A stretch of 64,000 bases of DNA, taken from NCBI GenBank assembly GCA_047495785.1, contig JBLDXI010000032.1, positions 4,340,001 to 4,404,000 on the forward strand, in the 5' to 3' direction. The notes under the pieces were generated by a model that did no database searches, was not told the origin of the DNA, and saw only the letters and a program-made list of their open reading frames with translations. The position numbers and the translations under genes are program-made. Shown here in pieces: positions 1 to 64,000 of this stretch. The stretch's first letter is position 1. Every line of letters begins with the position of its first letter. Origin of the DNA: Lepidodermella squamata. Lineage: Eukaryota; Animalia; Gastrotricha.

Positions 1-3000
1 GTGTCGGCGTCGACATGCAGCCGAGACGGGATCACAACCCGTGGAACGTCATTTTTTTCGTATCTTTCCTGCTCATCGTCTGCTTTTTTGTAAGTTTCTT
101 GTCGGATTTAATCAACAGAATTGATAAAACAAATTTACTACAGATTCTGAACATGTTCGTCGGTGTGGTTGTTCACAACTTTCAAAAGGTTCAAGAACGC
201 GTTCGGGCCGAGTTCAAAGCTAAGAAACTGCTGCAGAAACAAGAAAAGCTGTTGAACCGGCTTCGGAAACGCTCTCAAATGAACCCTAACCGTCAAAGTA
301 AGTTCTGCGAAATTCCTTTGTCATGTCCTTTATTCGTGGTGTCGTTTTAGGACTTCTGGTTAAGCTTACTAAACGAAGCCCAATGACGCGAGTTACGCAG
401 ACCTCGCCGGCTCTTCAAACTCTCGACGCGACCTTGGCCAATCTTGAAGCCTCCCCAGCAATTACGCTATCCTCCTCGATTCCAGCCGTGAAAGTATCGG
501 TCGAGAACAAAGCGCCTGCCGAAGATCTGTCCTTCCTCGAGGAATATCCCTACTGGCGGCTTGTGACGTATCAAATCTTCACTCACAAGTACTTTGAGCT
601 TGTTCTCGCGGCAATAACAGCCCTAAACATCCTGGTTATGGCTATCGAATTCTACGAAATGCCTCCAGAGTTGCAAATGGCCGTCAAAATAATCGGCTAC
701 GTATTCACGGCTCTTCTCGTGCTCGAAGTCTTCGCCAAAGTTGCTGCTTTCGGCTTCTATCGCTACATCAGAGAACGCTGGAACCAGCTGGACGTCGCTA
801 TTGTTTTCCTATCATTCGGCGCCATCTATTTAGAAGACGCCTCATCGGTAGTCATTCCGGTCAATCCGACTCTGATTCGAGTAGCCCGCATTGTTCGAAT
901 CGCTCGTGTTTTCAAACTACTGAAAACCGCGTCCGGAATTCGCCGGCTTCTCGACACGGTTGGCCGCGCCCTGCCTCAAGTCGGCAACTTGACCTTGTTC
1001 TTCCTTCTTCTATTCTTCATCTACGCCTCGTTAGGCGTTGAAGTAACTAATTTATCTAATTATTTTCCGTTGATACTGGAATAATGTATTTTCAGCTGTT
1101 TGGCAAATTTGATGGCGAGTATGGCAAGTGTGAAGGCCTGTCGCGCCACGCCAACTTCCACAACTTCGGCATTGCCCTGTTGACGCTGTTCCGCATTTTC
1201 ACCGGTGACGACTGGAACGGCATCCTCAAGGACATGCTGCGGTTGTCGAACAATAAGGAAGAGTGCGCGCTGCTGATGAAATCGGCCGCCAATGCGACGC
1301 CCGATCGCGATTTCAACATCGAGTGCACCATCGCCGGCGTCCTCGCGCCCTTCTACTTTGTCTCGTTCGTGCTATTCGCCCAGTTCGTGCTGATCAACGT
1401 CGTCGTAGCTGTCCTCATGAATGAGCTTGAGGTAATAATGGTGTTCACTAGCTTTGAGAAGATTGATCTTGACTTGTTCTCTCTTGGCGCGTTCAATAGA
1501 GAATGGTAAAATGATTGCACCATTGATTTATTGACTCAACCATTTTTGAGCACTCTGACATTAACTGACGCTCTTCCCTTTACATCGCTGTATATTTAGA
1601 ACATACTTCAAAACGCCTGAATTGAACCCCGCCTTGAGGATTTATCCGCGAGAGTGGCAAACTTTTGCACGTTCGCATTTGATTTTTCCAATTTTTTCAG
1701 TGAAACATCATCCATGCTTTCAATATATATGTTTATCCGAGGCACATATCGTTATTCGTTATTTCCCAACAGCAATTACTAATCCATTATTTTTCATCAA
1801 TATTTATGCTTATATTGGCTAACAATTTGATGTGATTTCATTCCACAGGAGTCACATCGCCGCGATGCAATGGAAAAGCTGGAGAGACCTGAAAATGCCG
1901 ACGAGGAAAATATCGAGCAAAAAGCGGCCGTTATGGAGGAAATCGTTAAAACAGCTTGCCAAGACCTGGTAAATTAATTAAGATTATTTGCAATATTTTC
2001 TCGTTTAACCAATTAAACTGTGATGGTGTCCCTCGAAATCGCAGTTCGAGTGCAATTTTCAGTCTTGCGTAAAAAAGAAGAAAGTGGTCGTCAGACGGCT
2101 GTCAGTGAACATGAAACGAAGACGATTTAGCACAACTGGTAATTGGTCGAAAGTGTTGTTTCAATGGCGTGTCTCCTCGTATTAACTTGGAGTGGCAAAA
2201 AATAACATCCCCTGTGAAACCTCAAATTTAGTAAACATTTTAGCGGCGTATTTTTATCCTTTAGCCGCAGTTTACCCTGATGTAAATTTGGCGTGATATT
2301 AATTATTTAATTAACACCACTTTCATGAATTTTTAATTTCTATTTTCCAGGTCGATCAGCTTCAAGCTAAGCTGGGAACAACTCGCGATGAAGTGATAGG
2401 CATAGTTACAACGGAATATTTGATCCGCGAGCAGGAAAACGAACAAAGCTATACGCCGAACACTAACGTTGTCACTACGCCAGCCTCGGTGGAACAATCG
2501 CCTAGTCTGCTGGCTCTAACGGCGTCGCGGCCTGTTCTCGTCAGCCACAGTGACACGATGTGTACTGTTAGCGTGGAAGAGCGCAAAAAACGCCGCCAAT
2601 TCCGCGCGAGTCTCGACCAGCAAAGTCGATCCATCCAGCGCGAAGGCTCGCTGAAGGTGCGACGGCGGGAGAGCAGTTACATCTCTGTTGATGCTGACGC
2701 GCTGGAACAAATTTTCCACGATCTGGGCGACGCGTTGACGCGGAACAAAGAGCCACCTGGCGCGCAACGTTCCGGTTCACTGGTCATCGACGAGTTTCTG
2801 GAAATGCGACGGCGGGCTAGTCACCATAACTTTGCGGCGGTAACACCACCCTGCGGTGGTGCGGTGGTGCGTCGCCAGGCCAGTCAGCGGCCGCGAGTGA
2901 AACAGCAAATGGCTATCGACGAGGTGCTGGAGGCGAAACCGCGGCTGAGCGCGTCGTGCCACGACTTGGAACGCGCGACAGGCAAACCGGCGGCGACGAG

Positions 3001-5046: not shown

Positions 5047-8000
5047 ATGGCGTCGTTCAAATCCAGAGATGGCGCTCGTCGTCGCGCCATTCGAAGGATA
5101 GGCGTCGCCGAAGAAGACCACTTCTGCGAAGATCGCATCATCGAGCCGGTTCGAGTCAAACTCATCGCCCCACCAACGCCGCGACTCGCGCCACTGGCAA
5201 ATGAAGAAATTACCATCATAAACAACGTCAACTACCAAAGCATAGCCAACGATCTGCCGGCAGTTGCTAATGAAGAACCGGCGAGTACGTGTTACATCAG
5301 ACCTCAGGAAGAGGAGAAGCGATATGCCGATACGTCGTTCTATTACTGTACTCGGCAGAATTCTTTCAGAAGGCTGATGATAGCGCTGGTCGAGTCAAAG
5401 TGGTTTGGACGGTTTTCTGTGTTCCTGATTCTAGTCAATTGTGCCTCGCTTGGTTTCATGGACACATGCGATTTCAACTGCATAATCTACCGCTGCCAGG
5501 TCATGCAAACCATCGATCTATGCGTGTTTGTCTTCTTCACAATTGAAATGCTGATAAAAATGATCGCGATGGGAATAGTCGGGCCGCGGTCCTACCTGTC
5601 GGAGCCTTGGAATGTCTTCGACTTTGTCATCATTGTCGTCGGCTCGACCGAGTTCGTCTACGGCAAGGGTGCGACGGCGTTTTCGGCGATTCGAACCTTC
5701 CGCGTTCTGCGCCCACTGCGCGCCATAAATCGAATACCGAGTTTAAAAATTTTGGTCGAACTGCTGCTTGAAAGCTTGCCTATGCTCGGCAACGTGCTCA
5801 TGTTCACGTTTTTCATCTTTTTCGTCTTCGGAATCTGTGGCATTCAACTGTGGGCCGGTGTGCTGCGGCATCGCTGCTTTTTCCCTGATACGCCCGAGTT
5901 CAAGGCGCAAATCGAGGCGCAGAACTTGACCCACTTTCTTATGGAAATGCCTAATTTCTACCGACGGCCCGGTGGCGGCGACTTTGTGTGCAGTCCTCAG
6001 TTTGGCATGCTGCGTTGTGAAGACATTCCGTTATTCGAGTAAGTTCTATTCATTCGAATCGCATCTTTTTTAGCCGTAAATTTCTCACCCAGGCAAGAAG
6101 GGTCGATTTGCGACCAGATTTTCCACGATGATGAAGCGATAATTTGCGGCAACCTGGTACCGAATTACACCGACTGCCGGCCGGGCGCGCCGAACCCGTC
6201 TCGCGAGACGGTCAGCTTCGACAACATTGGCGCCGCGTGGATCGCCATCTTTCAAGTAATCAACCTCGAATCGTGGACTGAAGTGATGTACTTCGTCCAG
6301 GATGCTTACTCTTTCTGGGTGTGGATCTACTTTGTCATTCTCATTGTGGTAAGTTTGATTTTCAGAGAATTACTCCAAAAAATTGATTCACTTTCTTAGA
6401 TTGGCTCATACTTTGCTCTAAACTTGTGCCTCGTCGTTATTGCCAATCACTTTCAAGAAGCTAAAAGCCGAACGTCGTCGCGCCTCGGCGGCACTCGTCT
6501 CTCGATAGATAGCACCTCAATCTACCTCCAAGTGCTAGACCTCATAGCTTACGGCATTCGGCAGTGCTTCGACTTTTTAAGCTGTGAAATCCCGCCAGTC
6601 ATACGCCAGCAGCAGCAACAAGCAGCTACGGCTGACGGCCGATCCACCGGCGGCGGTGGGGGCGAAGACAATCCGAGACGTGAAACTAGCTCAGAGCAAC
6701 TCGACCTCATCATGAGAGTCAGTGCTTATGGCATTTGTAAGTATTTTGCATAAAATCAATAATTTTTTTATTTACTTTATTTATCAACAGCTTTATCTGC
6801 TGCTCCTGTTGCTAACGGAGATGTAAATCGTCAGAAGAATAAACGTCCCAGTGTTTTTGTCAGTAAGTTATAAATAGCCACACAGTAAAGCTAAAGGATA
6901 ATTTTTGTGTTTTTTTTCAATCAGCTTTCATTCAACGTGAAGTTTCAGGCAGCCGGAAGTTTTTGCGCGATTTGTTCGAGCACGACAGCGTTGCGATGAT
7001 CATCATGGGCGTCATTGTGCTGAATACGCTCATCATGGGAACAGAACACCACCAACAGCCGGAATCGCTGACTGTCGCCATCGAAAGCCTCAACGTCGCC
7101 TTCACGATATTCTTCGCCGTTGAACTCATGCTGAAAATATACGCTTATGGCTTTCAGGTGTACATTCGCGACGGCTTCAACATGCTCGATTTGATTGTGG
7201 TGGTTGTCAAGTAATTACTTTTTCATTTTTAATTCGGTACAATCTAAGCTCTCTCACTAATTTTATTCAGCATTTTAATCAGGTATCAACTGGAAACAGA
7301 TTTAAAATCATTTCGAAAGACGCCGAAGAGAATGGGGTTGACTGATTATAATTTTCTTTAGGCTTCAATTTTCTTTCAATTTTATTGAGGGTTGTAGAAA
7401 TTTAGCATGTGTACTTCTTCTGCCTAGACAGAATTTTATTTTGCGCATCTGGAAATTTTCGGGATTATGTGAATTAATTTCGGATCTGTGGTTAAATTTT
7501 ACTCTAATCTAACATTTTAGTCTTGCTGAACTGGTGCAAGGCTCCGGAACCGGGTTCTTTGTGCTGCGAGCCTTCCGGTTAGTTCGCCTCGTCAAAATCA
7601 TTCGCTTCTTGCCCGGCCTACAGCGCCAGTTGCTCATCATGATGCGAACCGTCGACAACGTCGCCTCGTTCTTCTTACTCGTCAGTCTTTTCCTGTTCGT
7701 ATTCGCCATCATGGGCATGTCGCTGTTCGGCTGCCAGTACTGCCCGTCGCTGAACCGGTACATGCGGCCGGAATTCAAAGGCGTCGACGTGCCTGTCGGC
7801 GAGTTCGAACTCAACGACACGCTGATATTCGACCTGAGCCGTACTTCGAATGTCACGCTCGAGACGCCGAATGAAGGCCGCGACCACAGCCACGAGATCG
7901 ACCTGATATCATACTTCATATGCCCGCGAACCAACTTCGACACTCTTGCTTCGTCTTTATTCACCGTTCTACAGGTTTAAATCGATTTCCTCGAAATTTA

Positions 8001-11000
8001 ATGTATAAAAATGATCTAATTTCTCCAGGTTTTTACTCAAGACTCTTGGACCTCGGTGCTTAAAGATGGCATGACGGTCACATCGGACTGGGCTGGTCTT
8101 TATTTCGTAGCACTAGTGTCGATTGGCAACTACGTCCTCCTTAACTTGCTTGTCGCCATCTTGGTCGAAGGGTTCAGTAGCAGTGAAGAGGTTTGTAGAA
8201 AATGAAGTTTTTCGAATGACCTTTTAAAATTGAAATTAATGAAAACAGGACAGCTTAGCTAATAGCGAGGTCAGCCAGGATCATTTTTTTGCATCTGCAT
8301 TGCAAAAGGACAAGATAAAAACAGCGCCGATGGCATCTGTTGAGGTATGATCTTCGCCATTCTTATCTCATTGTAGCAAATAAGCTTCCGTTGCAGAGTT
8401 TATCGGACAGTTCAGAGACACCTCGCGGGTTGCCGATGCATACAATTTTAACAACACCCATCAGCAACTCGCCCATGTCGTGGCGGTCGACGTTGCGAGC
8501 CGCCTCCGCCAACGCCTGCTGCGGTCTCGGCCGCGTGATAGGCCAGCGGCGGCAGTATTCGTTCTTCGTCCTGTCGCCCGAGAACATGTTCCGCCGCGGC
8601 CTCGACTGCTTCGTGTCCAGCCGCTACTTCGACAACGTCATCTTGTTCTTCATCGTCTACAACTGCATTGTGATAACCATGGAGCGGCCGTCAATCAAAA
8701 AGGACAGTCTCGAGCGGAAGCTTATCGATCTATCTAATTCTGCCATTAATTTGATCTTCCTCATCGAAGCTATTCTTAAAATCATTGCCAAAGGTTTCAT
8801 TATCGGCGAAGGTGCCTACCTCAAAAACGGCTGGAATATTCTCGACTTCATCCTAGTAAATTGCTCAACTGTCTACACGCTGTTCGATCTGTTTTTCTCG
8901 CGGGTGGAGGAGGCTAAGATACTAGAAATTTTACGAGTTTTACGGCTACTACGAGCTTTAAGACCACTTCGAGTCGTCAACCGAGCTCCAGGGTTGAAAA
9001 TAGTCGTCGAAACACTGCTATTATCTGTCAAGCCGATTGGAAACATCATTGTGATAACATCGGCATTTTTCCTAATTTTCGCAATTTTGGGTGTTCAAAT
9101 GTTTCGCGGCTGTTTCTACCGGTGCGTTGTCGCCGGGTCGAAGTACGTGTCGAACCGGCAAAGAGCGGCGGCGCATCACGGCGGGCATCAGGCGTCTGAG
9201 GCTGAAATGCTGACATTTGAAACACTGTCTGGCGTGAAGAATCGGACGGATTGCGATGAGCTCGGTTCGACGTTTGAGTGGGAGAACGAGAGCTACAATT
9301 TCGACAACCTGCTGCAGGCCCTAATGACGCTGTTCGTTTTCGCCACCTTCGACGGCTGGGTCGAAATAACTCGCGCTGGTATCGACTGCGTTGGCACCGA
9401 TCTTCAGCCTATTCACGACTACAACCCGTGGCGCATTCTGTACTTCATTTCATTCCTGCTCATCGTGTGCTTCTTTGTAAGCCTGGGCATATCTAAGATT
9501 TTTGCCGATGAATTATCATTATTTTACAGGTTGTCAACATGTTTGTTGGTGTGGTTGTGACCAATTTCGAAAAAGTCCACAAGCGGGTGTTGGCCGAAAA
9601 GGAAGCCCAGCGACGGCGTGCTAAACGCATGCAGATACCAGCCCAGAAAAAATTCAGCATACCCAAAAGTAAGTCGCCTCTTCATGTTTGCTTAATCCTG
9701 ATCTAATCCTGATGATTCGATTTTTCAAGAAAAAATGTTCAAGTGCATGAATCGAAGTGGTTCGTCGTCGTCGCGGCCGATGTCGATGTCGAACGAAAAT
9801 TCGAATGTTCGAGCACCACCAGCCAGTCGCGGGGAGCCTCCAGCTCGGAGACAAGGCATATCAATGTCACAGACCCAGGCCGAGCTACGTAAGATGATAT
9901 GAAGCTACTTTCATCCTTACATTTAGCGTTTTACTGTGCATTGATGTGATAATGACAACATTTTTGGCGATTGTTTTAGGTCTATTACGGCAGCGATTCC
10001 GAAGCAGTAAATACTTTATTAGAAAGCTTTTCCCATTGCGTTTCTTCTGAGCTCTGGTAGACGGGAGCTAGTCTTGATAACTTTAGAACTAGAAATTGCA
10101 CGTTAAAACTATTATTTCACCCCTTTGACATTTCTGGAACGAGGACCTTGGGGCATCATCGTGAAATATTTCTGTATCATAACTTGGAAAAATTTACTAC
10201 GAAGATAGAGCGAAATATTCATTAATTTGAACGCTCTTTATTTCAACTTTTAGTAACCTTGAGTTCTCTATTTTCGTAGTCGTAGTATAATTTGCTTATA
10301 TTAGTGAGACCTGCTCAATCTGGATGTGGGCTTAATTTTGATTAATCCCCGCATTATTCCTGTTTGCATAAATTATTCCTCCTTAATGACCTATTTTTTG
10401 CAGTGCGAAATACGGTTCGACGCAACGCTCTATTGCATCGGTACCTGCAGTGGCGGCTGCGCATGTATCGCATATTCACACACCAATATTTCGAACTCGT
10501 ACTCGTCGCAATCACCACCGTAAATGTGCTAATCATGGCCGTCGAGTACTACCAAATGCCGAAAGAACTGCTGTTCGCCATCAAAGCCGCTAGTTACGCC
10601 TTCACAGTGCTACTCGGCCTCGAGCTCTGCATGAAAATGATAGCCATGGGCGTGAAGCGGTGCCTGCGCGACCCGTGGACCAAGCTCGACATATTCATCC
10701 TAGCCGCGTCATGTGCCGAGGTCCTCATGGAAGACTCCTACACGCGTTTCATGCCAATCAACCCGACTATTTTTCGACTTCTCCGCCTTGTGAGAATAGC
10801 GCGAGTGTTTCGGCTTTTAAAAACTGCGAAAGGAGTACGCCGGTTGCTGGATACCGTCAGCCAAGCCCTGCCTAAAGTCGCTCATCTCTCGCTCGTGTTT
10901 TTCCTCCTGTTTTTCATCTACGCCTCGCTGGGCGTTGAGCTATTCGGAAAATTTTCATGCCCATACGCAAAATGTGGCGGGCTGTCGCGTCACGCGAGTT

Positions 11001-12355
11001 TCGAACATTTCGGCATTGCCCTGCTAACCCTGTTCCGCGTCTTCACCGGTGACAAGTGGAACGGCATTCTGAAGGACATGCTGCACGTGTCGAGCGATGT
11101 CGACTACTGCTTGAAGCTGCTCGACGTTCAGGAGCAACTAGATGGCACGGTCGAGTGCCGAACAGCCGGCTACACGGCCCCATTCTTCTTCGTGTCATTC
11201 GTGCTAACCTCTCGATTCGTACTCATCAACGTCGTCATTGCCGTACTCATGAGCCAGTTGCAGCGGTCACAGCGTGAAGAAGCCGACGAGGCGAATGCCG
11301 ACCGCGTTAATATAACGCGAATTTTCCACACCAAGAAGGCGCCGCCTAATTCGGTGAGTTCAAATTCATCGCACAACGCAGATTTTTTTTAATTTATTTC
11401 AATGCATTGAAAGTGAATTAAATCAGTATTTTTCTGGAGATTTTGGAAAATTACACCTTTAAAATTACAGAACGTTAGGGAACCTATTCGTAAGAATGAG
11501 GTTGCTACTCAGGTTTCAATCGGACCATCGTTTCGATGGGTAAGTGTAACGGAATAACAAAAAGCACTCGACGACAGCTTCCTTGCACGGAAAATATTTC
11601 AAAAAATGGCACTTTTTCGCTTACAACACAATGCAAAAAATAATTTCACAATAGCATGGCTCTTCTTTCTAAAATCTCGAGCGCACATTGAAATTCGCAT
11701 GTGGGTGTTAATTTGAGTTCATTCTGTTTTGCAGGTTCAAAACAGCGAAGAAGATCTTGTGGTGGAGATGAACACGCTGTTTCACTACGGCAGTCGTTAC
11801 GGCACGCGCGATACCGGTCTGAGCGCCGCCCAGCACCACCAACGCCTCGCCTCTGTCGCTAGCTACCCGACGCGGCCGGTCAGTCGGCAGCCGTCCAGCC
11901 GTCGCCCGAGCCACTTCAGTGTCAGCAGTCGCGAACTCGGCGGTTCGATACGGCTGATCGACGCCAGCGCGCCGTCTCTCAGCAGCCTGTCTGCCCGCGC
12001 TCTTCAGTCGCACCGGCCGTCGTTCAAAGATCATCGGCGTTTGCCGCGAAACGCCTCAACAAGGTCGTCGAACAGAAGCAGTAAGCGGCGAGTTTCGCTT
12101 CGGATGAAAGCGTCCAGCCTGCACGGTGCCATCGACGACCCTCGCATCCGGCTGTGGACCGATGCGGCTCTGCGACATCAGCACTCGCTGCGTGGCGACA
12201 CCGCGAGCTCGGCATCGACTGTCGGCTTGGAAGACTGCAGTGACGTCATCGACAACACGGTGACGTACTACGAACCGCCGCCGATAACTGTTCACCAGGA
12301 AGAGGAAGATGATCTACCCAGCAGCAATGTCGAGTCATTTTGTATAGATGTCTGA
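5047..12355 (+). CDS. Cav3: T-type (Cav3-like) channel, paralog B, complete four-domain multi-exon gene
   Basis: DI S4 [29 protein letters not shown], pore INLESW (E 6268); NLCLVVIA plus gating-brake-like helix; DII pore FTQDSW (D 8041); DIII pore ATFDGW (D 9351); DIV pore FTGDKW (D 11051). First in-frame ATG is 5047, and the start is less certain than the body. Confidence 0.93.
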
Positions 12356-27314: not shown

Positions 27315-27647
27315 CAAGTATAAGGATCCTGAGTTCTAGCCCACGCCACTGTGTTCGTTCGAAATGTTTATCGCGAACCTCACGTTCGGTGTTACTCTTG
27401 AGGATAACAGCGATGATGGTATGTTTCAAGTCCGGTGTTAGCGTCAACATGTTGTGTGTGGGAAGCCACTGCTGTTGATCCGATCTAAATTAGGTTGTAG
27501 AAAATTAAACATCTTCAGATCGCTACGACTTGAAGGCCTGCGTAATTAGCTCCCTTAAGAGTCAATTGCGAGTCTCGGGTGGCATAAACATGATGTTGTG
27601 TTTTTTACAAAGTTCGAGTAAAGGGTATTTAAGGCTGCCTGAAAAGC

Positions 27648-32103: not shown

Positions 32104-32834
32104 GATTTCTCGCTATATCGCGGCATGAATGCTGTTCGTTATAGCTTTTAAAAGCGTCGTGGGAGCCGGCTCGTGCGATTGATACTTTTTGCGCGCGCTT
32201 TCTATTCTCTCTTCCTTTCTCTCGTTCACTATGCGCAATTTCGTCTAAAATAGCACATAGAAGCCGGATGCACTCGGCCGGCTCGGTGACGGAAGCGAGA
32301 ATACGAGCCGACGCAAGTGTTTACGAAAAGCTGTTATTTTAGCCGCAGCTTTTCGCACGACAACAGCGGCTGCGGCTGCGTTATAGATGAATGCAAAATT
32401 ATGAGTCCTGAATCGAAATCTGAACCAATTAGTTACCAGCAATGTAGCTATTACCTGCGCAGCAGATGAGGATTTTAGAGGATTTGAGGATTTGAGTGCT
32501 GAGCGGCACGACAGAGCAGAATTTACAGCGAGCTTTCTCCAGTTAATTCGGGTCAGCTATAATTCCTATATGGGTATGATGTCACGAATTCTCAATCTTC
32601 CTGATGAACACCCGCCCCCACGCAAATAGCTTTCCTGGTAATCAAAATAATCACATGTCATCAAAAAAATTTGGGTCTGCGTCCAAAAAGGCTAACCCTA
32701 CGCTTCTTTCAGCCAAAAGAAGATGAAATGGGCTGTAAGTAATCGCTGAAAAATATTACGAAACATACAAAAGCAACTGGGCGTAATCACTTTTTCAAAG
32801 CAGACAAATAAATCTTGAAGGATGAAAAGCCAAA

Positions 32835-40084: not shown

Positions 40085-43000
40085 CTATTTCGACACCGTT
40101 TCACTGACGTAGGAAATCCATGAAAAACTATGCGTTATCATTTTGCCCAAGCGCCGGCGATTAGGATCCGGGGCGAAATTCCGGCGCCTGGCCTCAGCAT
40201 ATCGACGCAGAAGCTCGACAATCTCACCGCTTGTTGTTCGACTCAACGGTCCAGCTGGGCTCGCGAAGCCAGCGAAAGATGTCTCCATTTCTTCATCTGT
40301 CTCCGCTTGCTCAACTCTGATTTTGACTCGGCTGGTTACTGAAGAAAACACCGACTCGTTTCCGCCCTTATTATCCTCGGCTATAACTTGTGACAACGTC
40401 TCGTGCGCATTATCAACTGCTCTTTGCATAAACGCCACACTCAAAGCCATTGGACACGTGAGATTCGCGGCAGAACGCGAGCAAAACATCCTTTCGATTC
40501 GGCCGCGCCATGCCTGCCGTCCCTCCTCGCCATCGAACATGTTGCTGAGAACATAGCAGGATAGGCTACTGGCGCACTGCCTTGAGAGCTTGTTCTGGCT
40601 CCGCAGACTGTTCAGCGACGGAAAACGCTTGCTGTCGTTGTAGCTTTGCAGGCGCATTTCTTCGAGTACGTATTCACAAGACAGAACTCGCATCAATTGA
40701 TTCAAGGGTAGTTCTAGTAACGGTGAATCTTCACCGATCATCGGCCTCTGAAAGATAGAAAATATTGAAACCGCATTTAAAGAATGAGACAAAATGCTAA
40801 CAATTCTAGTCTCGAACTCCTCAGTTATTGTTTTTTCAATAGTTTCGCATCGTTCTGTTGTCATTCGCGAAATTTTTGTGGCCACTTCACTGTTTCTCTG
40901 ATCTTTCGAATTTTCCGGCGACAGTTTCGGCGTGCCACTCGGTAACACGTTTTCGACCTCCTTCTCGCTGGAATCTTGTAAATTTCGCATCAGCACAGCA
41001 ACGACGATGTTGATGAGAAAGAACTGCGTGAGCAATACGAATGAAATGAAGTAGACAGGGGAGATGAAGTAGACGATTCCACAGGGTATCGCCCGGTTCG
41101 AATGTGCGATGAAGGCTTCGCAAATCTCTGAATTACCGGCGATCGCCAGCATATCCTTAAGGATAGCGTTCCAGTTATCGCCTGTGAAGATGCGAAACAG
41201 GGTAAGCATTGTCAGGCCGAAGTTGTCGAAACCGGCATGGCGGGATAGGCCTTCACATGTTGTGCCCTCGGGGCAGACGAAAGTTCCGTAAAATTGAACA
41301 CCAAGCGCCGCATACACGAAAAACAGCAGCAGGAACAGAATTGAGAGGTACATGACGTGAGGTATCGCTTTGGCAATGGTGTCGATCAAATGCCGAATAC
41401 CCTCGGCAGATTTCAGGAGTTTGAACGCCCTAGCAATGCGAAATACTCTTGCTGCGCGAATAAGAGTGGGGTTAATTGGAATATAAGCCTCTAGGACGAT
41501 GCCGAAAACTGAAAGCAGAAAGATTCCGAGGTCGATTTGGTTCCAGCGCTCGGAGATGTAGCGCACGAAACCGAAAGCAACGATTTTCATCAAAGCTTCC
41601 AGTGCCATAAGTGTCATGAAAAAGTAGCTGCAGTAGCCGATTAGCACGTTGAAAATTTGAGGCATTTGGTAATACTCAACTGCCATTATAAGGAGGTTGA
41701 CAAGCGTGAGGCCGATGATGACGATTTCGAAAATGTCGTTCGTCACAAATTTGTAGAGAAATATTCGCCAAGATGGGTAATGCATCCAATATTCGTCCGC
41801 CTGGGGCGAATCTTCGTCTTCATCCGAGAACAGCCTGTGCAGTTCTTTCGGCGGGCCATCAGCCGGATGGCCGGGGACTCCTTGTGCGGCATGGTGGGCT
41901 GGGATTGCCAGCGATTTCGCGGCTATTCGAGCGAGGACGCTTGACGTTTGCAAGCTGCACATGCGCTGTTTCACCTGCTTTTCGATGTACTTTTGCACTC
42001 GCTCAAAGTTGTTTACAACAACGCCGACGAACATGTTTAGAGCCTAACATTTGAACTCATTTTAGCTTTGTTAATGCGGCGCGGTATGAATGTGAACTTA
42101 CGAAGAAACAAACAATCAGCAAAAAAGAGATGAAGTAAAAATAGGCAAACGGGCTGTGACCAGGAACAGGCTGAAAAAAATAAAGATCATCGCTACGAAA
42201 TTATTGCAATTTTCCTCATCCATTACTAACTTGTAAATCTGAACCAGCACACTCAACACCGTTGAGAGTCACAGCAGTCCAGCCGTCGAGGGTAGAAAAG
42301 ACGAATAGAGTCATGAAAGCTTGCGGTAGACTGTTGAAGTTGTACGGCTCGATTTCCCACTCGAAACCGAGACTCTCGCACTGATTTCGGTCTTGAACAG
42401 ACTCGAACATGCGTATGACCGCGCCGGTTTTCGCCAGAATTGCGGCGTTTCCATCGCTGCCATTTACTTCGATGACTTGGGGGAATACGCATCGAGCAAA
42501 GCATCCGCTATACAGCTGCACGCCGAGAATTGAGAAGACTCCGAAAAATACAAAGCAGATGAACACTGCATCGAAATATTATTCGATTAAATGAAGTAAA
42601 ATTTAGGAAAAAATTCACCAATATTGCCGATTGGTTTTAGTGAAAGCATCAGCGTTTCCAGGACTATTTGCAAGCCTTGCGCTCGACTAATAACACGAAC
42701 AGGGCGTAGAGCTTTCACGAGACAGAAAACTCTCAGAACTGTTCGGAAAATCTCGAAAGCCCCGAAAGTATCATCGCCATCATCGCCCATGTGCATCGGG
42801 ACATGTTCAAGGACGACGTCGAGTAACCCAGCAACAACTAGAAGGAAATCAATCTTGCCCCACATATTACTTAGAACCGCCTTGTGACCATTCGAGAAGC
42901 CGAATGCAATACTTCTAGCCAAGATTTCCAACGTAAAAACAGCGGTGAAAAAGTGGTTAGCCGTATTCATCGTGTGGCGTTCCCAGGAGTCCTGGCCCAT

Positions 43001-46000
43001 CAGCGGCCGCTCCAAAACTATAGGAACACAACTAGCCAAAATGACGAAGAGGAAGAACGTCTCGTAATTCTTTGAGGCGAGCAGCTTTTTTAGTTTTCGG
43101 CGCAGACGGCTGTTACGATCGAACAAGCAAAGGGCGTTATCCGAACGGTAACGGCGTCGAATTTTCTCGGCAAATGTTGTTGGCTTCGGAATCCTGGCAG
43201 TGTGTTTCAGCAATTGGGGTAATAACTGTTTGAAACTTAAAATTAAAATCTAAATAATTCTAATAACGGGGCACATACCTCAGCAGCTCTTTCCTCGGCA
43301 AGCAGTTGTAGCACATCGTTCGACCCGAAAACAGCCAGCTCCAATTCAGGCCCATCGTCCTTAAAAAAAGAAGAAATGAACTTGAATTCGGAGAAAAATG
43401 CGAGTAACTTACATCCATTCCACAGAACCCCTCGACCAAAATTGCAATCAGCAGGTTGAAGATGATGTAGTTTCCGATGGCTACAACAGCCACGAAATAA
43501 ACCCCGGAAAAATTGCTGGTGAAGTGCATCCCGTCACGCATGATTGGCGACCAGCTGTCCTGGGTAAATATCTGCAAAAAGCCAAAACTCGTCGGCAGAA
43601 GGCAATCAAATCAAGAAAAACCTGTAGAACAGTGAACAGTGACTGGAATAATGAATCGAAGTTGATTTGCGAGCACTTCATGTGTCCCGGAAATGCCTCA
43701 GTAGCATTCGATTCACTCGTGGTATTTGAGGATAAGGACTGAAATTCAAAGTATTGATCGAGACTTAGCACCTGCATCATACAAGGCAGTGGCTCCAGCG
43801 AAGCGTTTCGACTCGCCTGTGTGTCGTTGTCTTTGTGCTGCTCCATTTGGCAGAATTTACATCCGAAAAGAGACATCCCGAATAACGAAGAAATAAACAG
43901 GAAAAAACTGAGAAGCATGAAAAATGTTGCGACGTTATCAACAGTTCGAATCATAGCCATGAGCTGTTTCTTTAAATCATCCGGCATAAAATGGATGATT
44001 TTCACGAGCCGAACAAGTCGGAAAAGCCTCAAGACAGAGAACCCGGACGGACCTGACCCTGAAGCAAGTAGCTCAGCGACACTTTCAAGTAGAAATGACG
44101 ATGCTATCACAGTTGAACAAACTTGAAATTTATATTACTTTATGCTTATGATGACAGTATCGATTATGTTGAAGCTGTTTGAGATGAATACGATCGGGCC
44201 GTAGGCGTAGAATTTGACGAGCAACTCGACAACAAAAACGAAGGTGAAAAGTATATTTACGACCTCGTGAATCAGCGTTACAACGTGCGACTAAATTTCG
44301 GAATCGAAAATTGATCAATTCAAAACTTAAAAAAATTCATACCTGTCCGTAATGCTCTGTCGCCATTACACAGGCATTTAGGACTATCATGATGCCGGTG
44401 ATGATGAGGGTAACGTTGTGCCCTAAAATATGGCGGAGAAACGCCCGGCTTCGCTGAACTGCCGCCCCGATGTGAACACAAAAGGCACACCGCTTCTTTT
44501 GTCTAGGAGGATACTCGCCCGGCTGTAGTTCGGGCGCTATTTTCTTCGGGAAAACTCGATGCCACGCGTGGTTTATCCAATGAATGAGCCATTTAATCAT
44601 TTGAGCATACAGGCCGTCATCCTTCTCATCGCCGGCCTCTGCCTCGGCTTCGGCGAGGATCGAATCTACTTCGCTCGGTTCTTTGGCAACAAGCTGTTCT
44701 TCCGCTTTCTGCAAAATAAATCTATATAACTGGACTATCAAATTTTGAATTTATGCTCACGAGTAGCTCGGTTTCGCGAGCTTTTGTTTTCGTAAATTGG
44801 GTAGCGACGACAACGAGGCAAAGGTTCACAGTGAGGTATGCCCCGATCTAAATATCAATGATCAAGGAATGACTCAAAGAAACTATTCGTTTACCATGAC
44901 GAGAGCAATGAAATAAATCCACACCCAGAAGGAATAGGCATCCTGTATCAAGTACATGATGTCTGTCCATGATTCGAGCGAGATGACTTGGAAGATTGCC
45001 AGCCAGGCGAAGCCAATGTTGTCAAAATTCAGCGTGCCTCTCAGCGGGTTCGGGCCATCTTGCCGACACTCGGTGTAATTTCTAACCCAACTACGGCAAG
45101 CTTCCAGCCGTTCGCGATCGTACGCAAATCTCTCCAAACACATTGATTTTTTGCGTCTGGAAAATGAAAATCAGGCAAATTGATATTGATTGAAAACGAA
45201 GCTTGTATTACTCTTCAAGCGCAATGTCGCTACAGCGAAGTAAGCCGAACGAATCCGTACAAATAAATTCGACTTCATCGGGCGGTTCATAGTAAGCTGG
45301 CATGAATGGTGGAGGCTATATTATGATCAAAAAAACATCCAACATCCGAGTGAAACAAATGCTGTTAGTTACCGTTGCATCTTTTGGAAAGAAACAGCGC
45401 TGCCTCAATATTCCAGCCCATAATTGGACAGCAACAATACCAAATACGGAAAACGTGAAGAAGAACAATATCAGCACTGTCAAGTTTGGATGTACTTCTT
45501 TTAAAAAATCGTTATAATTTTAGAAAACGCCGTTACCGTTGCCCATCATAGGCAAAATGTCCAGCAGGAGCGATATGAGTAATCGAAGGCTTTTAATTCT
45601 GTTAATTGCTCGCAACGGCCTCAAAACTCGAATTGCTCTGATGGCTGTGAAATTAACCCCACTGTTCGCGAAGATATACTCGGATGCACTAAATCCAACA
45701 GATGTTAAGTACATCTCAATTGCTAGGAAATTGACCCTAATACCTGATAATCACAATGAAGAAGTCGAAGCAGTTCCATGAATCCCTGAGGTAGGCATTT
45801 TCGCCGGCCCAGAAGCCGAGCGCGAGAATTTTGAGGCACATTTCGAAGAAGAAGAACATAAAAATGAAGTGTTCAACCTGCGACAGCACAGCGCAGGTCG
45901 GTTTAAGGCACGCGACATCGCACGGATCGGTCATGCCCAGCGCTATGCAGTTGACGAGAATGGCGACGAGGCTGACGCGTTTGAAGGCCTTGCTCGCGAT

Positions 46001-46096
46001 CAGCCGATCGGCGTTGTAGCGCAGCCGAGCCAGGAATCGCGGCGGCGGCCCCGGCGGTCCGGGCAGCTGGTCGAGGTCGACGAACGACTGCGGCAT
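40085..46096 (-). CDS. Cav3: T-type (Cav3-like) channel, paralog C, complete four-domain gene
   Basis: DI S4 [17 protein letters not shown], pore ISLESW (E 44973-75), [11 protein letters not shown]; DII pore FTQDSW (43557-59); DIII pore STLDGW (42285-87); DIV pore FTGDNW (41177-79). DIV plus C-tail lie in one ~2-kb exon. Confidence 0.93.
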
Positions 46097-52929: not shown

Positions 52930-55900
52930 ATGGCGACGAGATCGCCGAATAGTGAGGTGTTGCAGGCCAAGTCATTCCTTTGCCTAAGCCTGGACAATCC
53001 ATTCCGGCGAGCTGCTATTAGACTCGTCTCCTCAAGATAAGTTCTTGCTATGTTGCCATCATCATTTATCCCATATCATTTTATATACATGGTTCGAGCG
53101 ATTTTCAATATTTATGATCGTAGTCAATTCAATGGCTCTTGGCATGGTCGACCCATGTGACGTCAAATGCCGCAAGCCAGTTTGCGCCACACTCCAGGTT
53201 GTTGAAGACGTAATATCAGCCTTTTTCGCGGTCGAAATGTTGTTAAAAATGCTAGCGATGGGCATAACTGGAAAGGGCGCCTATTTAGACGAGTCGTGGA
53301 ACCGCTTCGACTGCTTCATCGTCATAATTGGCACTTCCGAGTACATATTCGCCGACCAAGAGATCAACTTGTCAGCTATCAGAGCCATTCGAGTTCTGCG
53401 ACCACTTCGGGCGATCAACAGAATTTCGAGCCTCCGTCTTTTGGTCACTCTGCTGCTTGACATTCTTCCCATGCTAGGCAATGGTAAGGTCTCAACGTTA
53501 CACCTTGAAATCTTTGAAATTGCCCTTTTCAGTGATGATTTTCTGCTTCTTCATTTTCTTCGTATTCGGCATTGTTGCAGTTCAACTTTGGGCCGGGATG
53601 CTTAGGCATCGGTGTTTTTTCCCTAATGATCTGTTCACATCTAACTCAACCGCCCAACCGCCGCCTTTCATGCCTCAGTACTACAGCCAGCCACATCGCG
53701 AATTCATTTGCTCACCCGCGGGCGGGGAGACTCACTGCGGGCAGATACCGCAATACGAAAAGCACAGTTCGATGTGCGCCGACATGTTCCCGGCTTCTAC
53801 CGAACCGACCAAACTAATGCTGTGCCGCCGCTGGGTTGCGAACTACACCGAGTGCCGGCCTGATGGGCCTAATCCAGCCCGCGGTACCATTAACTTCGAC
53901 AACATTGGATCGGCGTGGATCGCTATTTTTCAGGTCATATCGCTCGAATCTTGGACGGAGGTCATGTACATGATGATGGTGAAGCATATTCGCAAAGTTC
54001 TTGAACATTTTCTAAATCGAGTTATGCAACACAGGATTCGTTTTCGTTCTGGGTTTGGATCTTTTTTATCCTGCTTGTCTTGGTAATTCTGGAGTATTGA
54101 TTTTTCTATTCGTTTAAAATTTGAAAATGTGTAGATTGGGTCCTATCTAGCGGTTAATTTGTGCCTCGTGGTCATTGCAACTCAATTTTCCGAGACGAAA
54201 TTGCGCGAGGCTGAAAGGATGGTAAGTTAGGCGAGGACATTTTTTTTAATGCATTGCTCACGCTTTCTGCTCTTAGAAAAAAGAGCGACTGGCTGAAATC
54301 GATTCTGCAAGCTCATCCTCATCAATGTCGTCGATTATGTCGACTGACGACGGTCTGTACGCCCAGATAATCGACCTGATATTCCACTATATTCGCTATG
54401 TAAAACGCAAGCTGTGCCGAGTGAAATCGAAAAAGCGTCACCTTAGTCTTCTCGTAATGTCCGTTAATGTTCCTGGCAACCGGCGTCTCACTCGCCAGGG
54501 CTCTTCGGTTGGCGGCGGGGCTTGCCCGGGTTGCCGACATCGTCTGCGTCTGATGCGACATGGCCGGCTAAGCAAAGCTGAGAGCAAAGAGCCGTGTCTG
54601 CTATGCGGTCGGTCGCCGAATTTCGAGCAGCTATTGTCGAAATTTCCGTACGGAGAAAAGCGATACTGCAAAAACAACTGCCTTAACGGTTTTGTCTCCT
54701 GTATCCAACGATCTCGAACTTGGCTAAGGGACCTACTCGAGCATGATGCGTGTGTTGCCGCTGTCATGGGTACGATTGTTGTCAATGCCGTAGTGATGGC
54801 GCTCGAACACCATAACCAACCAGAAGCGCTCACTTCTTTCATCGAGGTCATGAATATGATCTTTACTACAATTTTCGTCACCGAGCTCTGCATCAAGCTG
54901 TTTGCATACGGGTTCGAAGCTTTCATTCGAGAGGCCTTCAACGTCTTGGATGCTGTTGTTATCGCGATTAAGTACCTAATTAAATTTTTTATTTTTCTTG
55001 TTTAATCTCGATGTGTTTGAAGTATTGCGGAGCTGTTTTTCGACCAGGACGGTTCAAGCTCTGGCTTTGCGGTGTTGAGGCTGTTCAGGCTTGTGAGGAT
55101 CGTCAAAATCATTCGATTTCTACCGGCTCTGCAAAAGCAACTAATGGTTATGGTGGCTGTTGTCGATCACGTGGCCACTTTCTTCCTTCTCCTCGGATTT
55201 TTCTTATTTATTTCGTCACTGTTGGGCATGTCGCTTTTCGGCTGCAAATTCTGCGAGAAGACCACACGAGGAAACGGCGGAAATATTCTTTTGAACGGTA
55301 CAATGTCCACCTGTGCTCTTCAGGTAAACTCATATCCAGGAACAACAGCAAACAAACTATAAAATAATTCAGGTTATCGACATCGATCAAGTCGAGGCAC
55401 TGGAGCGTGGCTTAGCGGCCATGCGTTCAGCTGCTGACGATGAAGAGGAAGTCTACTACGGCTGCTCTATAGCCAACTTCGATTCACCCTTCCAAGCCAT
55501 TTTCACTGTTCTACAGGTGTTCACTCAAGACGATTGGGGTGCCGTAATGCAGGATGGCATGCATTACACGTCACCGTGGGCTGGTGTTTATTTCGTTTCT
55601 TTGGTAACCATCGGCAACTACATCATTTTCAACCTTCTGGTCGCCATTCTTGTCGAAGGTTTCAGCAGCAAAAGCGTAAGAAATTTTCACCCTTAACTAT
55701 AGCTACTACTATAATTCGGCTTTGCAGCAAGACGATTTGCTCGATTGCGAGAACAAAGCTTTGGAAATTATAAAAAAGAAGACTGAAACAAACCTCCAGT
55801 TAGATCCGGAGGAGCTCGAGAATGGCGCTGTCGATGGGGCAAAAGCAGAGAGCAATTTTGCCCGTGCAGCTCGTTGTTGTCGCTGCATGGGCAGCGTTTT

Positions 55901-62600: not shown

Positions 62601-64000
62601 GGCAGCAAACTTCGACAACGTCGGGCAAGCGCTGTTCACTGTGCTGCAAATCTTCACTCAGGACGACTGGGGCGCTATAATGAAAAATGGCATGCATTTC
62701 ACGACAGATTGGGCCGGTCTTTACTTCATAGCCATCGTCACGCTTGGCAACTACATCATCTTCAATTTGCTCGTCGCCATCCTTGTCGAGGGATTCAGCA
62801 GCAAAAGTGTAAGTTTTTGACTGAGAAATCAACCCTTTGCGAAACTTAATTGCAGGAGGAAGCCGTTATGAAAGCGAACAAATTGTTGGCAGCTCAGGAC
62901 GATGAATTGAGCACTGCCAAGGTGCCGGTTGATATCGCCGAAGAAGTAAAACGGCAGAATACTATGCTATGGCCGTGCCGCATCGCGCGAAAGTACCACC
63001 TGCGTCTGAAAAGCAAATTTCTAGCGATGTGGAACGCTGACGGCGATGCGAATTTTTCGCTGCTAATTTTCAGACGCGATCACAAGTTGCGCGTGTTTTT
63101 GAACGCAGTACTGACGTCGCAAACCTACGAAAGCGTTCTGCTCGGCTTGGTCTTCGCCTCTTGCTTGTTGATCGCGCTCGAAAACCCGCGCATCGGCAAA
63201 AACAGCTGGGAGCGCCTCGCCCTGAAATCAATCAACCACGCCATCAACATCGCGTTCATGATCGAATGTGTCGGCAAAATAATCGCGCAGGGCTTTGCTT
63301 TCGGTCGCGATGCTTACCTGCGTTCGTGGTGGAACGTCCTCGACTTCTTCCTCATTTGCATTGCATCCGTCGATGTAGCCCTAGATGTGCTTGATCCTAA
63401 TGTAGCCAACCGTAAAATGATACAGGTACTGCGAGTTTTGCGCCTTCTTCGTGCTCTCCGGCCACTGAGAATGATCAACAAAACGCGCGGACTCAAGGTT
63501 GTCATTGAAACATTGCTGATGTCGATCAAACCTATTGGAAATATAAGTAAGCGTTTATACAGCGCGCCTTTAGATAACACTTTAAATTAATTCTAACAGT
63601 TTTGATTTGTTGCTTCTTCTTCGCGATTTTCGCAATTTTCGGAGTTCAGCTGTTCCGCGGCTGTTTCGCGCGCTGCGTCGCTCCAAAGCAAATGCCCGTT
63701 AACTTTTCGCTGATATATCCTGGCGATGGCTCTGACGGTCATAACGTCTCCAAAGAGGCTTACATCCGATGGGCCATGGAGACAATTTCGACTCTCGACA
63801 ACAAAACGCAGTGCTTGAACCACGGCCTAGAGTGGGAGACGGAGTCGTACAATTTCGACTCGTTGCCAGAAGCCCTCATGGCCCTATTCGTTTTTTCGAC
63901 TCTTGACGGCTGGGCTGATATCACGCGAAATGGCGTCGCTTGCGTTGGTGTCGACCAACAGCCTATTCCTAATTACAACCCGTGGAACTTTTTGTATTTT
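59665..64000 (+). CDS. Cav3: T-type (Cav3-like) channel, paralog E; DI-DIII, 3'-truncated by the window edge
   Basis: [22 protein letters not shown] pore ISLEGW (60901), [14 protein letters not shown] pore FTQDDW (62662), DIII pore STLDGW (63905). Confidence 0.93.

What the first reader, a model, noticed from the sequence alone, without database searches (positions are those of the whole stretch)
8029..8049. Non-canonical EDDD selectivity filter shared by the cluster
Seen: DII pore loops read TQDSW (B 8041, C 43557) or TQDDW (D 55529, E 62662). With DI LESW/LEGW, DIII DGW and DIV GDxW, the three complete genes have E-D-D-D, and E has E-D-D in the three domains visible. Established: canonical Cav3 is EEDD (DII TQEDW), Cav1/2 are EEEE, and Nav1 is DEKA. 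Inference: the E-to-D change predates the duplications, and the shorter side chain should widen the filter and weaken Ca2+ selectivity. I cannot check whether EDDD Cav3s are already described in this lineage.
Basis: partly seen in the sequence, partly recalled or inferred. Interest (0 to 1): 0.85.

Follow-up and report, generated by a model that had tools for sequence, protein, structure and literature searches.

The report
T-type calcium channels with altered filter
A small invertebrate, probably a gastrotrich, has a tandem family of intact T-type calcium-channel genes in which one of the four pore residues that choose the ion is aspartate instead of the glutamate that reviews call invariant; the change is old and conserved, but its effect on the current is untested.

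Summary
Window bases 8029-8049 encode V-F-T-Q-D-S-W, the start of an exon of gene B. Genes C, D and E carry TQDSW, TQDDW and TQDDW at the stated places. The aspartate aligns without gaps to the domain II filter glutamate of human Cav3.1, Cav3.2 and Cav3.3. No glutamate exists anywhere in these pore loops. B, C and D read E-D-D-D, E reads E-D-D, and A shows only its domain IV Asp.

My gene models are open through all modelled domains, with 47-61 nt GT-AG introns. All 24 exonic variants listed for gene B are synonymous. A related animal found in two metagenomes has one-to-one orthologues of A, B, D and E with the same Asp. It also has a sister paralogue that keeps Glu (TQESW). The change therefore most likely arose once, before the cluster's duplications.

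Three reviews state that Cav3 is always EEDD, and I found no paper on a natural EDDD channel. Annotated but unstudied teleost paralogues also read TQDDW, so this lineage is not unique. Nothing functional was tested here.

First-reader notes of this scan report more EDDD Cav3 genes on other pieces of this genome. I did not check them.

The parts
8029..8049 (+). Gene B, domain II filter V-F-T-Q-D-S-W; the filter Asp codon GAC is at 8041-8043
7975..8028 (+). 54-nt GT-AG intron of gene B that splits the domain II pore loop between TVLQ and VFTQD; gene C has an intron at the same place (43572-43621, minus strand), D and E do not
8029..8190 (+). Gene B exon holding the filter, the P2 helix and S6 of domain II
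5413..11251 (+). Gene B, modelled conserved core (domain I S1 to domain IV S6). Filter residues: LESW 6265-6276, FDGW 9348-9359, GDKW 11048-11059. The N- and C-terminal ends were not modelled.
40088..46096 (-). Gene C, apparently complete (candidate start near 46096; the last exon 42043-40088 holds domain IV and the tail). LESW 44978-44967, TQDSW 43565-43551, LDGW 42290-42279, GDNW 41182-41171.
53108..58257 (+). Gene D, modelled core. LESW 53943-53954, TQDDW 55523-55537, LDGW 56808-56819, GDNW 58000-58011.
59920..64000 (+). Gene E, domains I to III (cut by the window end). LEGW 60898-60909, TQDDW 62656-62670, LDGW 63902-63913. The domain II S4-S6 exon is 62166-62808.
1..1419 (+). Gene A, 3' part only (end of domain III, and domain IV with GDDW at 1204-1215). 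Its domain II lies before the window.

Best explanation
The window holds part of a tandem array of paralogous genes that descend from the animal T-type (Cav3) calcium channel. In their common ancestor the domain II filter glutamate became aspartate through one third-position change (GAR to GAY; all four window genes now have GAC). This turned the E-E-D-D ring into E-D-D-D. The change came after a first duplication that left one paralogue with Glu, and before the duplications that produced genes A to E. It has been kept in every copy of two diverged species, so these are working channels and not decaying copies. Shown: the sequences, the alignment, intact reading frames in the modelled parts, the orthology and the signs of constraint. 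Inferred: they are voltage-gated, low-voltage-activated cation channels whose filter binds divalent ions less tightly and lets more monovalent cations through than an EEDD channel. This rests on the published behaviour of the engineered Cav3.1 EDDD mutant. Also inferred: the paralogues differ in Na+/Ca2+ preference, because the residue after the filter position differs between them (domain II D, S or A; domain IV N, K or D). Published work holds that position to govern Ca2+ versus Na+ preference.
For: Placement of the Asp:
- The domain II exon of gene E aligns without gaps over 66 residues to human Cav3.3, Cav3.2 and Cav3.1. The query reads '[11 protein letters not shown]' against 'vfqiltqEdwn', with full-chain E-values near 1e-57 to 1e-59, against about 1e-28 for Cav1.1.
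- The filter columns of the 51-sequence alignment agree.
- In the AlphaFold model the Asp is the first residue after the P1 helix (helix 152-164, Asp165, next helix 169-175). The four best fold matches are Cav3.1, Cav3.3 and Cav3.2.

Gene integrity:
- Models for B, C and D have all four domains open, with 47-61 nt GT-AG introns.

Phylogeny:
- The ten genes form one clade with support 100.
- The Glu-bearing L001 is sister to nine Asp-bearing genes (support 99).
- The orthologue pairs are B-L003 (100), A-L006 (98), D-L005 (98) and E-L004 (98).
- The clade sits inside metazoan Cav3 (support 99), with a choanoflagellate outside.

Constraint:
- dN is 0.20-0.45 while dS is saturated.
- All 24 exonic variants listed for gene B in DNA contigs are synonymous, and 16 lie outside the modelled exons.

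Family features:
- A gating-brake-like motif follows domain I S6 ([10 protein letters not shown] and a second helix..Y.Q[IV]..L[IV]).
- Pfam finds no IQ domain in the complete tail of gene C.

Function, from papers only.
Against: - No current has been measured.
- I have no clear proof that the genes are expressed. One spliced contig in run X3 matches intron 9477-9529 of gene B, but that run also covers introns and may be largely DNA.
- E to D keeps the charge. The Cav3.1 EDDD mutant changes only moderately, and Asp-lined CatSper pores are Ca2+-selective, so the change could be nearly neutral.
- A single origin is favoured but not proven (AU p = 0.065).
- The linkers and gene ends were not fully modelled, so 'intact' holds only for the conserved cores of B, D and E, and for C from its candidate start to its stop.
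- The clade branches outside the bilaterian Cav3 group, beside Hydra, although the animal is probably a spiralian. This may be a long-branch effect.
Confidence: 0.6

Rival explanations
1. The E-to-D change is functionally almost neutral. The channels are ordinary Ca2+-preferring T-type channels, and the Asp was fixed by chance in the ancestor and then inherited by all copies.
For: The charge is kept. The engineered EDDD Cav3.1 still activates near -50 mV with only modest kinetic shifts. A fast-evolving teleost paralogue switches between TQEDW, TQDDW and TQENW among species, which suggests the position tolerates change. CatSper pores lined by Asp are Ca2+-selective.
Against: The Asp has not reverted in any of nine genes of two species whose synonymous sites are saturated. 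It is accompanied in all nine, and in no other Cav3 in the alignment, by Phe three residues before the filter position in both domain II and domain IV. That pattern looks like a coordinated rebuild. The same preprint reports altered permeation for the EDDD mutant.
Confidence: 0.3
2. The cluster copies are pseudogenes or decaying duplicates, and the odd filter reflects relaxed selection.
For: It is a large tandem family. No firm RNA evidence was obtained.
Against: The modelled domains of B, C and D have open frames and canonical short introns. Orthologues are kept in a second species. dN is far below the saturated dS. Exonic variants in gene B are 24 synonymous to 0 non-synonymous.
Confidence: 0.03
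3. The alignment is out of register, and a Glu or another residue actually sits at the filter position.
For: None found.
Against: The alignment to three solved human Cav3 structures is gap-free from the P1 helix through S6. There is no Glu anywhere between the NFD motif and S6 in B, C, D or E. The model puts Asp165 at the P1-P2 turn.
Confidence: 0.01
4. The genes form a separate, old Cav3-like subfamily rather than a recent lineage-specific radiation of the single invertebrate Cav3 gene.
For: The ten-gene clade branches outside the well-supported bilaterian Cav3 group, in an unresolved position with Hydra. The whole clade, including its Glu-bearing member, lacks the Lys of the canonical domain III 'KDGW'.
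Against: No member from any other named animal was found among the 150 best representatives or among 120 fragment hits. Long branches can push a fast-evolving group toward the base of a tree. No other, canonical Cav3 from the metagenome relative appeared in the searches.
Confidence: 0.15

Closest known systems
Canonical Cav3 T-type channels (human Cav3.1-3.3; Lymnaea LCav3; Trichoplax TCav3)
   Same: Four-domain architecture. The best sequence and fold matches are Cav3. The genes fall in the metazoan Cav3 clade. Domain III and IV filter residues are Asp. A gating-brake-like motif is present, and Pfam finds no IQ domain in the tail of gene C.
   Different: The domain II filter residue is Asp, not Glu. 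Phe replaces Leu (domain II) and Ser/Ala (domain IV) three residues before the filter. The Lys before the domain III Asp is lost. There are at least five tandem genes here, where invertebrates are said to have one or two (PMC10120453).
Engineered 'CatSper-like' Cav3.1 pore mutant EDDD (Garza-Lopez et al. 2016, Cell Calcium; bioRxiv 10.1101/626069)
   Same: The same ring, E-D-D-D, on a Cav3 background.
   Different: It is a single laboratory substitution in a human channel. Here the ring is natural, old and embedded in other filter-side changes. The mutant's reported traits (less Cd2+ block; more Na+, Mn2+ and Cd2+ permeability; slightly negative shift of activation; faster activation; slower deactivation) are a prediction for these genes, not a measurement.
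Cav3 channels made Na+-permeable at the position after the domain II filter residue (Lymnaea exon 12a; anthozoan Cav3 with Asn)
   Same: Genes B and C (Ser), and the A-type orthologue L006 (Ala), lack the Asp after the domain II filter residue, as the anthozoan gene does. Separate genes rather than splice variants carry the alternatives.
   Different: Those channels keep EEDD. Here the neutral residue sits on an EDDD ring. In B it is combined with a Lys, and in A with an Asp, at the matching domain IV position.
Short Cav3 paralogue of percomorph teleosts (for example Oreochromis XP_039472111.1, annotated 'alpha-1H-like')
   Same: A natural E-D-D-D ring (TLEGW / TQDDW / KDGW / TGDNW) in cichlids, Micropterus and Etheostoma.
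   Different: It arose independently within vertebrate Cav3. The residue varies between related fish (TQEDW, TQENW). It keeps Leu before TQ and the domain III Lys. I found no functional study of it.
CatSper sperm channels
   Same: Asp at the filter position.
   Different: They are one-domain subunits that form a DDDD ring, and are only distantly related. They show that an Asp-lined filter can still select Ca2+.

Membership tests
Cav3 (T-type) voltage-gated calcium channels | Four homologous six-helix domains in one polypeptide, with charged S4 segments | tested here: met
   Spliced models of B, C and D contain domains I-IV in order, with Arg/Lys-rich S4 segments. Pfam Ion_trans matches the pieces.
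Cav3 (T-type) voltage-gated calcium channels | Closer in sequence and by descent to Cav3 than to Cav1/Cav2, Nav or NALCN | tested here: met
   The E-value against solved Cav3 chains is 1e-57 to 1e-59, against about 1e-28 for Cav1 and 1e-15 for Nav. The genes lie inside the metazoan Cav3 clade with support 99, and Cav1/2-type rows fall outside.
Cav3 (T-type) voltage-gated calcium channels | E-E-D-D selectivity-filter ring, stated to be present in all known Cav3 (PMC4436565, PMC5379919, PMC10120453) | tested here: not met
   B, C and D read E-D-D-D and E reads E-D-D. By descent they belong to the family. By this motif they are a variant.
Cav3 (T-type) voltage-gated calcium channels | Helix-loop-helix 'gating brake' at the start of the I-II linker, in place of the AID beta-subunit site | tested here: inconclusive
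   D, C, L001 and L006 carry ATQF[ST][EK]TK.RE after domain I S6, as Lymnaea and vertebrate Cav3 do, followed by a ..Y.Q[IV]..L[IV] stretch. HMMER lines this stretch up with the Cav3.2 and Cav3.3 brake region, but below significance. B is more diverged. My AID pattern matched nothing, but it also missed the four Cav1/2 controls, so that scan is uninformative.
Cav3 (T-type) voltage-gated calcium channels | No calmodulin-binding IQ motif in the C-terminal tail | tested here: met
   The complete last exon of gene C (domain IV plus about 290 tail residues) hits only Ion_trans and PKD_channel in Pfam, with no Ca_chan_IQ or GPHH. A simple IQ pattern found nothing in the models, but the models cover the tail poorly, except for gene C's last exon checked with Pfam. 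The tails of B and D were not fully modelled.
Cav3 (T-type) voltage-gated calcium channels | Low-voltage activation, fast inactivation, small conductance | not testable with these tools
   Needs electrophysiology.

The most novel reading that the evidence does not exclude
This animal has turned its Cav3 gene into a graded set of paralogues on a shared E-D-D-D ring. The residues next to the ring (domain II D/S/A; domain IV N/K/D) set each copy somewhere between Ca2+-preferring and Na+-carrying. These channels would then take over part of the fast inward current that other animals assign to Nav1. Unchecked notes of this scan report that the para-type Nav, a Cav2 and the Nav2 genes of the same genome also have non-canonical filters.
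Probability: 0.2. Interest if true: 0.75.

Novelty: new variant of a known kind. Interest (0 to 1): 0.55.

Why it matters
The EEDD ring is treated in the literature as a fixed hallmark of T-type channels from choanoflagellates to humans. This window holds a natural, conserved exception carried by several paralogues that also differ at the neighbouring positions thought to decide between Ca2+ and Na+. A Glu-bearing sister gene in the relative can serve as an internal control. That gives electrophysiologists a ready-made series for testing how ring side-chain length and the outer residues combine to set selectivity, without designing mutants. It also corrects the 'always EEDD' statement, because unstudied teleost paralogues break it too.

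Tried and rejected
- **Taxon identification.** A protein search with the window's ENPP-like gene gave at most 39% identity, so it did not place the animal.
- **Genome identity.** The link to Lepidodermella squamata is circumstantial. The published assembly is 122 Mb in 157 contigs at 43% GC, made from amplified DNA in 2024. The scan lists about 1,995 windows on 148 pieces, the window is about 45% GC, the holder run is from 2024, and the reads show palindromic joints.
- **Expression.** No run on record as RNA holds the genes. Laying run X3 gave low depth, coverage of introns as well as exons, and a single spliced joint. I make no claim of expression.
- **dN/dS.** Synonymous sites are saturated, so NG86 and YN00 gave no ratio for orthologue pairs. 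I report dN and the saturation only.
- **Spliced aligner.** My first version invented short introns in the variable turrets and shifted the frame. One search showed the true 49-nt intron of gene D. I added splice-site and length terms and reran it. The modelled I-II linker of gene E is still wrong in one exon.
- **Polymorphism count.** The first count used the wrong codon phase for the last exon. One search corrected it.
- **Tree building.** Automatic alignment inside treekit timed out. I aligned with a faster MAFFT mode.
- **More species.** A profile search of fragment-sized proteins found no further Asp-bearing species.
- **Metagenome DNA scan.** I did not run it, because protein searches already covered ENA, JGI and Logan assemblies.
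- **Full-length fold.** A four-domain fold was not possible, because spliced proteins have no reference in these tools.
Full report
**What is at the coordinates.** Window bases 8029-8049 read GTTTTTACTCAAGACTCTTGG, which is V-F-T-Q-D-S-W. This is the first codon run of an exon. The 54 bases before it (7975-8028) are a GT-AG intron, and the preceding exon ends in ...SLFTVLQ.
- Domain I: LESW in B, C and D, and LEGW in E.
- Domain II: TQDSW in B and C, and TQDDW in D and E.
- Domain III: DGW in B, C, D and E.
- Domain IV: GDDW in A, GDKW in B, and GDNW in C and D.

All four domain II Asp codons are GAC.

**Whether the Asp really sits at the filter position.** The domain II exon of gene E (window 62167-62805, 213 residues, uninterrupted) was compared with all solved structures. 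The best matches are human Cav3.3, Cav3.2 and Cav3.1, with E-values of 6e-59 to 2e-56. Cav1.1 scores about 4e-28 and Nav channels about 1e-15.

From the P1 helix through S6 the alignment has no gap over 66 residues. It places the query's '[18 protein letters not shown]' on 'vfqiltqEdwnvvlyngm'. There is no glutamate anywhere between the NFD motif and S6 in B, C, D or E. No other register could therefore put a Glu in the ring.

An AlphaFold model of this exon has mean pLDDT 64, and about 80 in the pore-loop blocks. It shows a helix at residues 152-164, then Asp165-Asp166-Trp167-Gly168, then a helix at 169-175. Asp165 is thus at the P1-P2 turn. The four best fold matches in the PDB are Cav3.1 (twice), Cav3.3 and Cav3.2.

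In a 51-sequence alignment the four filter columns read EDDD for B, C and D, EDD- for E and ---D for A. They read EEDD for Lymnaea, vertebrate, Hydra, leech and choanoflagellate Cav3, and EEEE for a Cav1/2-type outgroup.

**Whether the genes are intact.** I wrote a small protein-to-genome spliced aligner and ran it against the Lymnaea Cav3 protein, the best named relative.
- After I added splice-site and length terms, B, C and D gave open models through all four domains. E is open through domains I-III, and A from the end of domain III through domain IV.
- Nearly all introns are 47-61 nt with GT-AG ends.
- Gene C appears complete. It has a candidate start near 46096 and a single last exon of 652 codons (42043-40088) that holds domain IV and the tail.
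- The ends and parts of the linkers of B, D and E were not modelled, so 'intact' applies to their conserved cores.

**Evidence of selection.** DNA contigs of run X1, and a few of X3, laid on gene B show 40 listed differences. Of these, 24 fall in modelled exons and all 24 are synonymous. The other 16 lie outside the modelled exons (one search used the wrong phase for the last exon, and one search corrects it). Between orthologues (see below) dN is 0.20-0.45, while synonymous sites are saturated, so no ratio can be computed. Both results indicate long-term purifying selection.

**Expression is not established.** No run on record as RNA holds the genes. Run X3 contains one contig that skips intron 9477-9529 of gene B. 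It also covers intronic sequence and carries strand-switch joints typical of amplified DNA.

**Relatives.** I searched 1.84 billion representative proteins with the gene E exon. Apart from ordinary Cav3 channels, this found fragments with TQDDW, TQDSW, TQDAW and TQESW at 58-64% identity. All come from two ENA metagenome assemblies.

Their contigs (L001-L006, about 38% GC against about 45% in the window) carry five Cav3 genes of one related animal.

| Locus | Domain I | Domain II | Domain III | Domain IV |
|---|---|---|---|---|
| L001 | LEGW | TQESW | TFDGW | TGDNW |
| L003 | not on contig | TQDSW | TFDGW | TGDKW |
| L004 | LESW | TQDDW | TLDGW | TGDNW |
| L005 | not on contig | TQDDW | TLDGW | not on contig |
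| L006 | LEGW | TQDAW | TFDGW | TGDDW |

A maximum-likelihood tree (LG+G4, 1079 columns) joins the ten genes with support 100. It pairs B with L003 (100), A with L006 (98), D with L005 (98) and E with L004 (98). It places the Glu-bearing L001 as sister to all nine Asp-bearing genes (support 99).

The duplications that made A, B, D and E are therefore older than the split of the two species. On this tree, parsimony needs one E-to-D change on the stem of the nine genes, plus a second, unrelated one in a cichlid fish. Forcing L001 to group with the B and A pairs costs 33.4 log-likelihood units. The AU test gives p = 0.065, so a single origin is favoured but not formally proven.

The ten-gene clade lies inside metazoan Cav3 (support 99), with the choanoflagellate Salpingoeca infusionum channel outside. 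It sits beside Hydra rather than within the bilaterian group. I take this as a possible long-branch effect and list the alternative as a rival.

**Which animal.** I could only test this indirectly.
- The published assembly is 122 Mb in 157 contigs at 43% GC. It was made in 2024 from multiple-displacement-amplified DNA (PMC11660948).
- The scan counts about 1,995 windows of 62-64 kb on 148 pieces, and the window is about 45% GC.
- The main holder run dates from 2024, and the strand-switch joints fit amplified DNA.

I call the identification probable. A protein search with a neighbouring gene did not help.

**How rare the change is.**
- Among the 150 best representatives, domain II loops of the TQxxW type read TQEDW 49 times. 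TQD.W occurs five times, four from this lineage and one from Oreochromis.
- Among 120 fragment-sized hits to a profile of the family, 109 read TQEDW and two read TQENW, one of them from the coral Porites. That is the known anthozoan type. Only the two already-known metagenome fragments differ otherwise.
- The Oreochromis protein belongs to a short (about 1,200-1,400 residues), fast-evolving percomorph paralogue annotated 'alpha-1H-like' or 'alpha-1I-like'. It reads TQDDW in Oreochromis, Astatotilapia, Micropterus and Etheostoma, TQENW in Sander, and TQEDW in most others.

Natural EDDD rings therefore exist in public annotation outside this lineage, though there the residue varies between species.

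**What the literature says.** Three papers from the field state that EEDD is present in all known Cav3 channels, from choanoflagellates to humans (PMC4436565; PMC5379919; PMC10120453). Full-text searches for EDDD with T-type or calcium-channel terms, and for the motifs themselves, returned only the work on engineered Cav3.1.

That preprint reports the following for the domain II mutant EDDD: a small negative shift of activation, faster activation and slower deactivation. It cites the authors' 2016 Cell Calcium paper for reduced Cd2+ block and higher permeability to Cd2+, Mn2+ and Na+. It is a prediction by analogy, not a result for these genes.

**More than one residue changed.** Several other filter-side positions differ from canonical Cav3.
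- All nine Asp-bearing genes have Phe three residues before the filter position in both domain II (FTQD) and domain IV (FTGD). L001 and every other Cav3 in the alignment have Leu, and Ser, Ala or Cys, at those positions.
- The whole ten-gene clade lacks the Lys of the canonical domain III 'KDGW'.
- The residue after the filter position differs by paralogue and is conserved between the two species:

| Gene pair | Domain II | Domain IV |
|---|---|---|
| D/L005 and E/L004 | Asp | Asn, where known |
| B/L003 | Ser | Lys |
| C | Ser | Asn |
| A/L006 | Ala (seen in L006) | Asp |

Spafford's review argues that an Asp at this domain II position favours Ca2+ selectivity and a neutral residue favours Na+ permeability. 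It also says that only an anthozoan Cav3 gene was known to lack this Asp, and that among non-vertebrates only anthozoans and flatworms have two Cav3 genes. On that reasoning D and E would be the more Ca2+-preferring copies and B and C the more Na+-permeable. This is inference only.

**Family membership.** By descent these are Cav3 genes.
- They have four domains, their best matches are Cav3, and they fall in the Cav3 clade.
- They have a gating-brake-like motif ([10 protein letters not shown] and a second helix) after domain I S6.
- Pfam finds no IQ or GPHH domain in the complete tail of gene C.
- They fail the motif definition (EEDD) used in reviews.

I therefore class them as a new variant of a known kind.

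**Context from the scan (unchecked notes).** Other first-reader notes report more EDDD Cav3 genes on other pieces of this genome. They also report a continuation of this array beyond the window end, a Cav3 with TQEAW (which would match the Glu-bearing L001 type), and non-canonical filters in the para-type Nav, a Cav2 and the Nav2 genes. I did not test these. They motivate the more speculative reading given in the section on the most novel reading.

**Verdict.** The evolutionary inference is supported. The functional inference is reasonable and backed by mutant data from the literature, but untested here. For channel specialists this is a real, conserved exception to a stated rule, and it comes with a useful natural series of paralogues. 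The substitution is conservative, however, and is not unique in nature. I score interest as moderate.

Noticed in passing
window 8032-8034, 43568-43566(-), 55520-55522, 62653-62655 (domain II) and the domain IV loops near 11042, 41188(-), 57994, 1198: All Asp-bearing genes of both species have Phe three residues before the filter residue in both domain II (FTQD) and domain IV (FTGD). The Glu-bearing paralogue L001 and all other Cav3 in the alignment have Leu, and Ser, Ala or Cys. This looks like a coordinated rebuild of the filter support.
   Followed up: partly
window 9348-9359, 42290-42279(-), 56808-56819, 63902-63913: The whole ten-gene clade, including its EEDD member, has Phe or Leu in place of the Lys of the canonical Cav3 domain III 'KDGW'.
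   Followed up: partly
window 11048-11059 (B, GDKW); 1204-1215 (A, GDDW); L003 and L006: The residue after the domain IV filter Asp is Lys in B and Asp in A. Both are kept in the orthologues of the second species (L003 TGDKW, L006 TGDDW). The domain II partner is neutral in B, L003 and L006; A's own domain II lies outside the window.
   Followed up: partly
P0058, P0293, P0294, P0302, P0304 (teleost proteins): Percomorph fish have a short Cav3 paralogue whose domain II filter varies between species: TQDDW in cichlids, Micropterus and Etheostoma, TQENW in Sander, and TQEDW in most. This contradicts the 'always EEDD' statement of the reviews.
   Followed up: partly
window 7975-8028 and 43572-43621(-): B and C share an intron inside the domain II pore loop, between TVLQ and [VI]FTQD. 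D and E have none there.
   Followed up: no
window 20189-22226(-), 27633-30152(+), 32826-33899(+), 34193-36679(-), 37073-38527(+): Between the channel genes lie an amino-acid transporter (Aa_trans), two long intronless ORFs with an ANF_receptor ligand-binding domain, an ENPP-type phosphodiesterase, and an ORF with weak Cys-loop receptor matches below the Pfam cut-off.
   Followed up: no
runs X1 and X3 laid on window 5400-11390: Many 'opposite strands' joints appear in X3 contigs, as expected for multiple-displacement-amplified DNA. One joint skips intron 9477-9529, so X3 may hold some cDNA-derived sequence.
   Followed up: partly
L001 1-21059: The Glu-bearing Cav3 gene of the metagenome relative is not in a Cav3 array within the 21 kb fetched. 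It lies between SNF2-helicase and diacylglycerol-kinase genes on one side and ribosomal protein SA and KDEL-receptor genes on the other.
   Followed up: no
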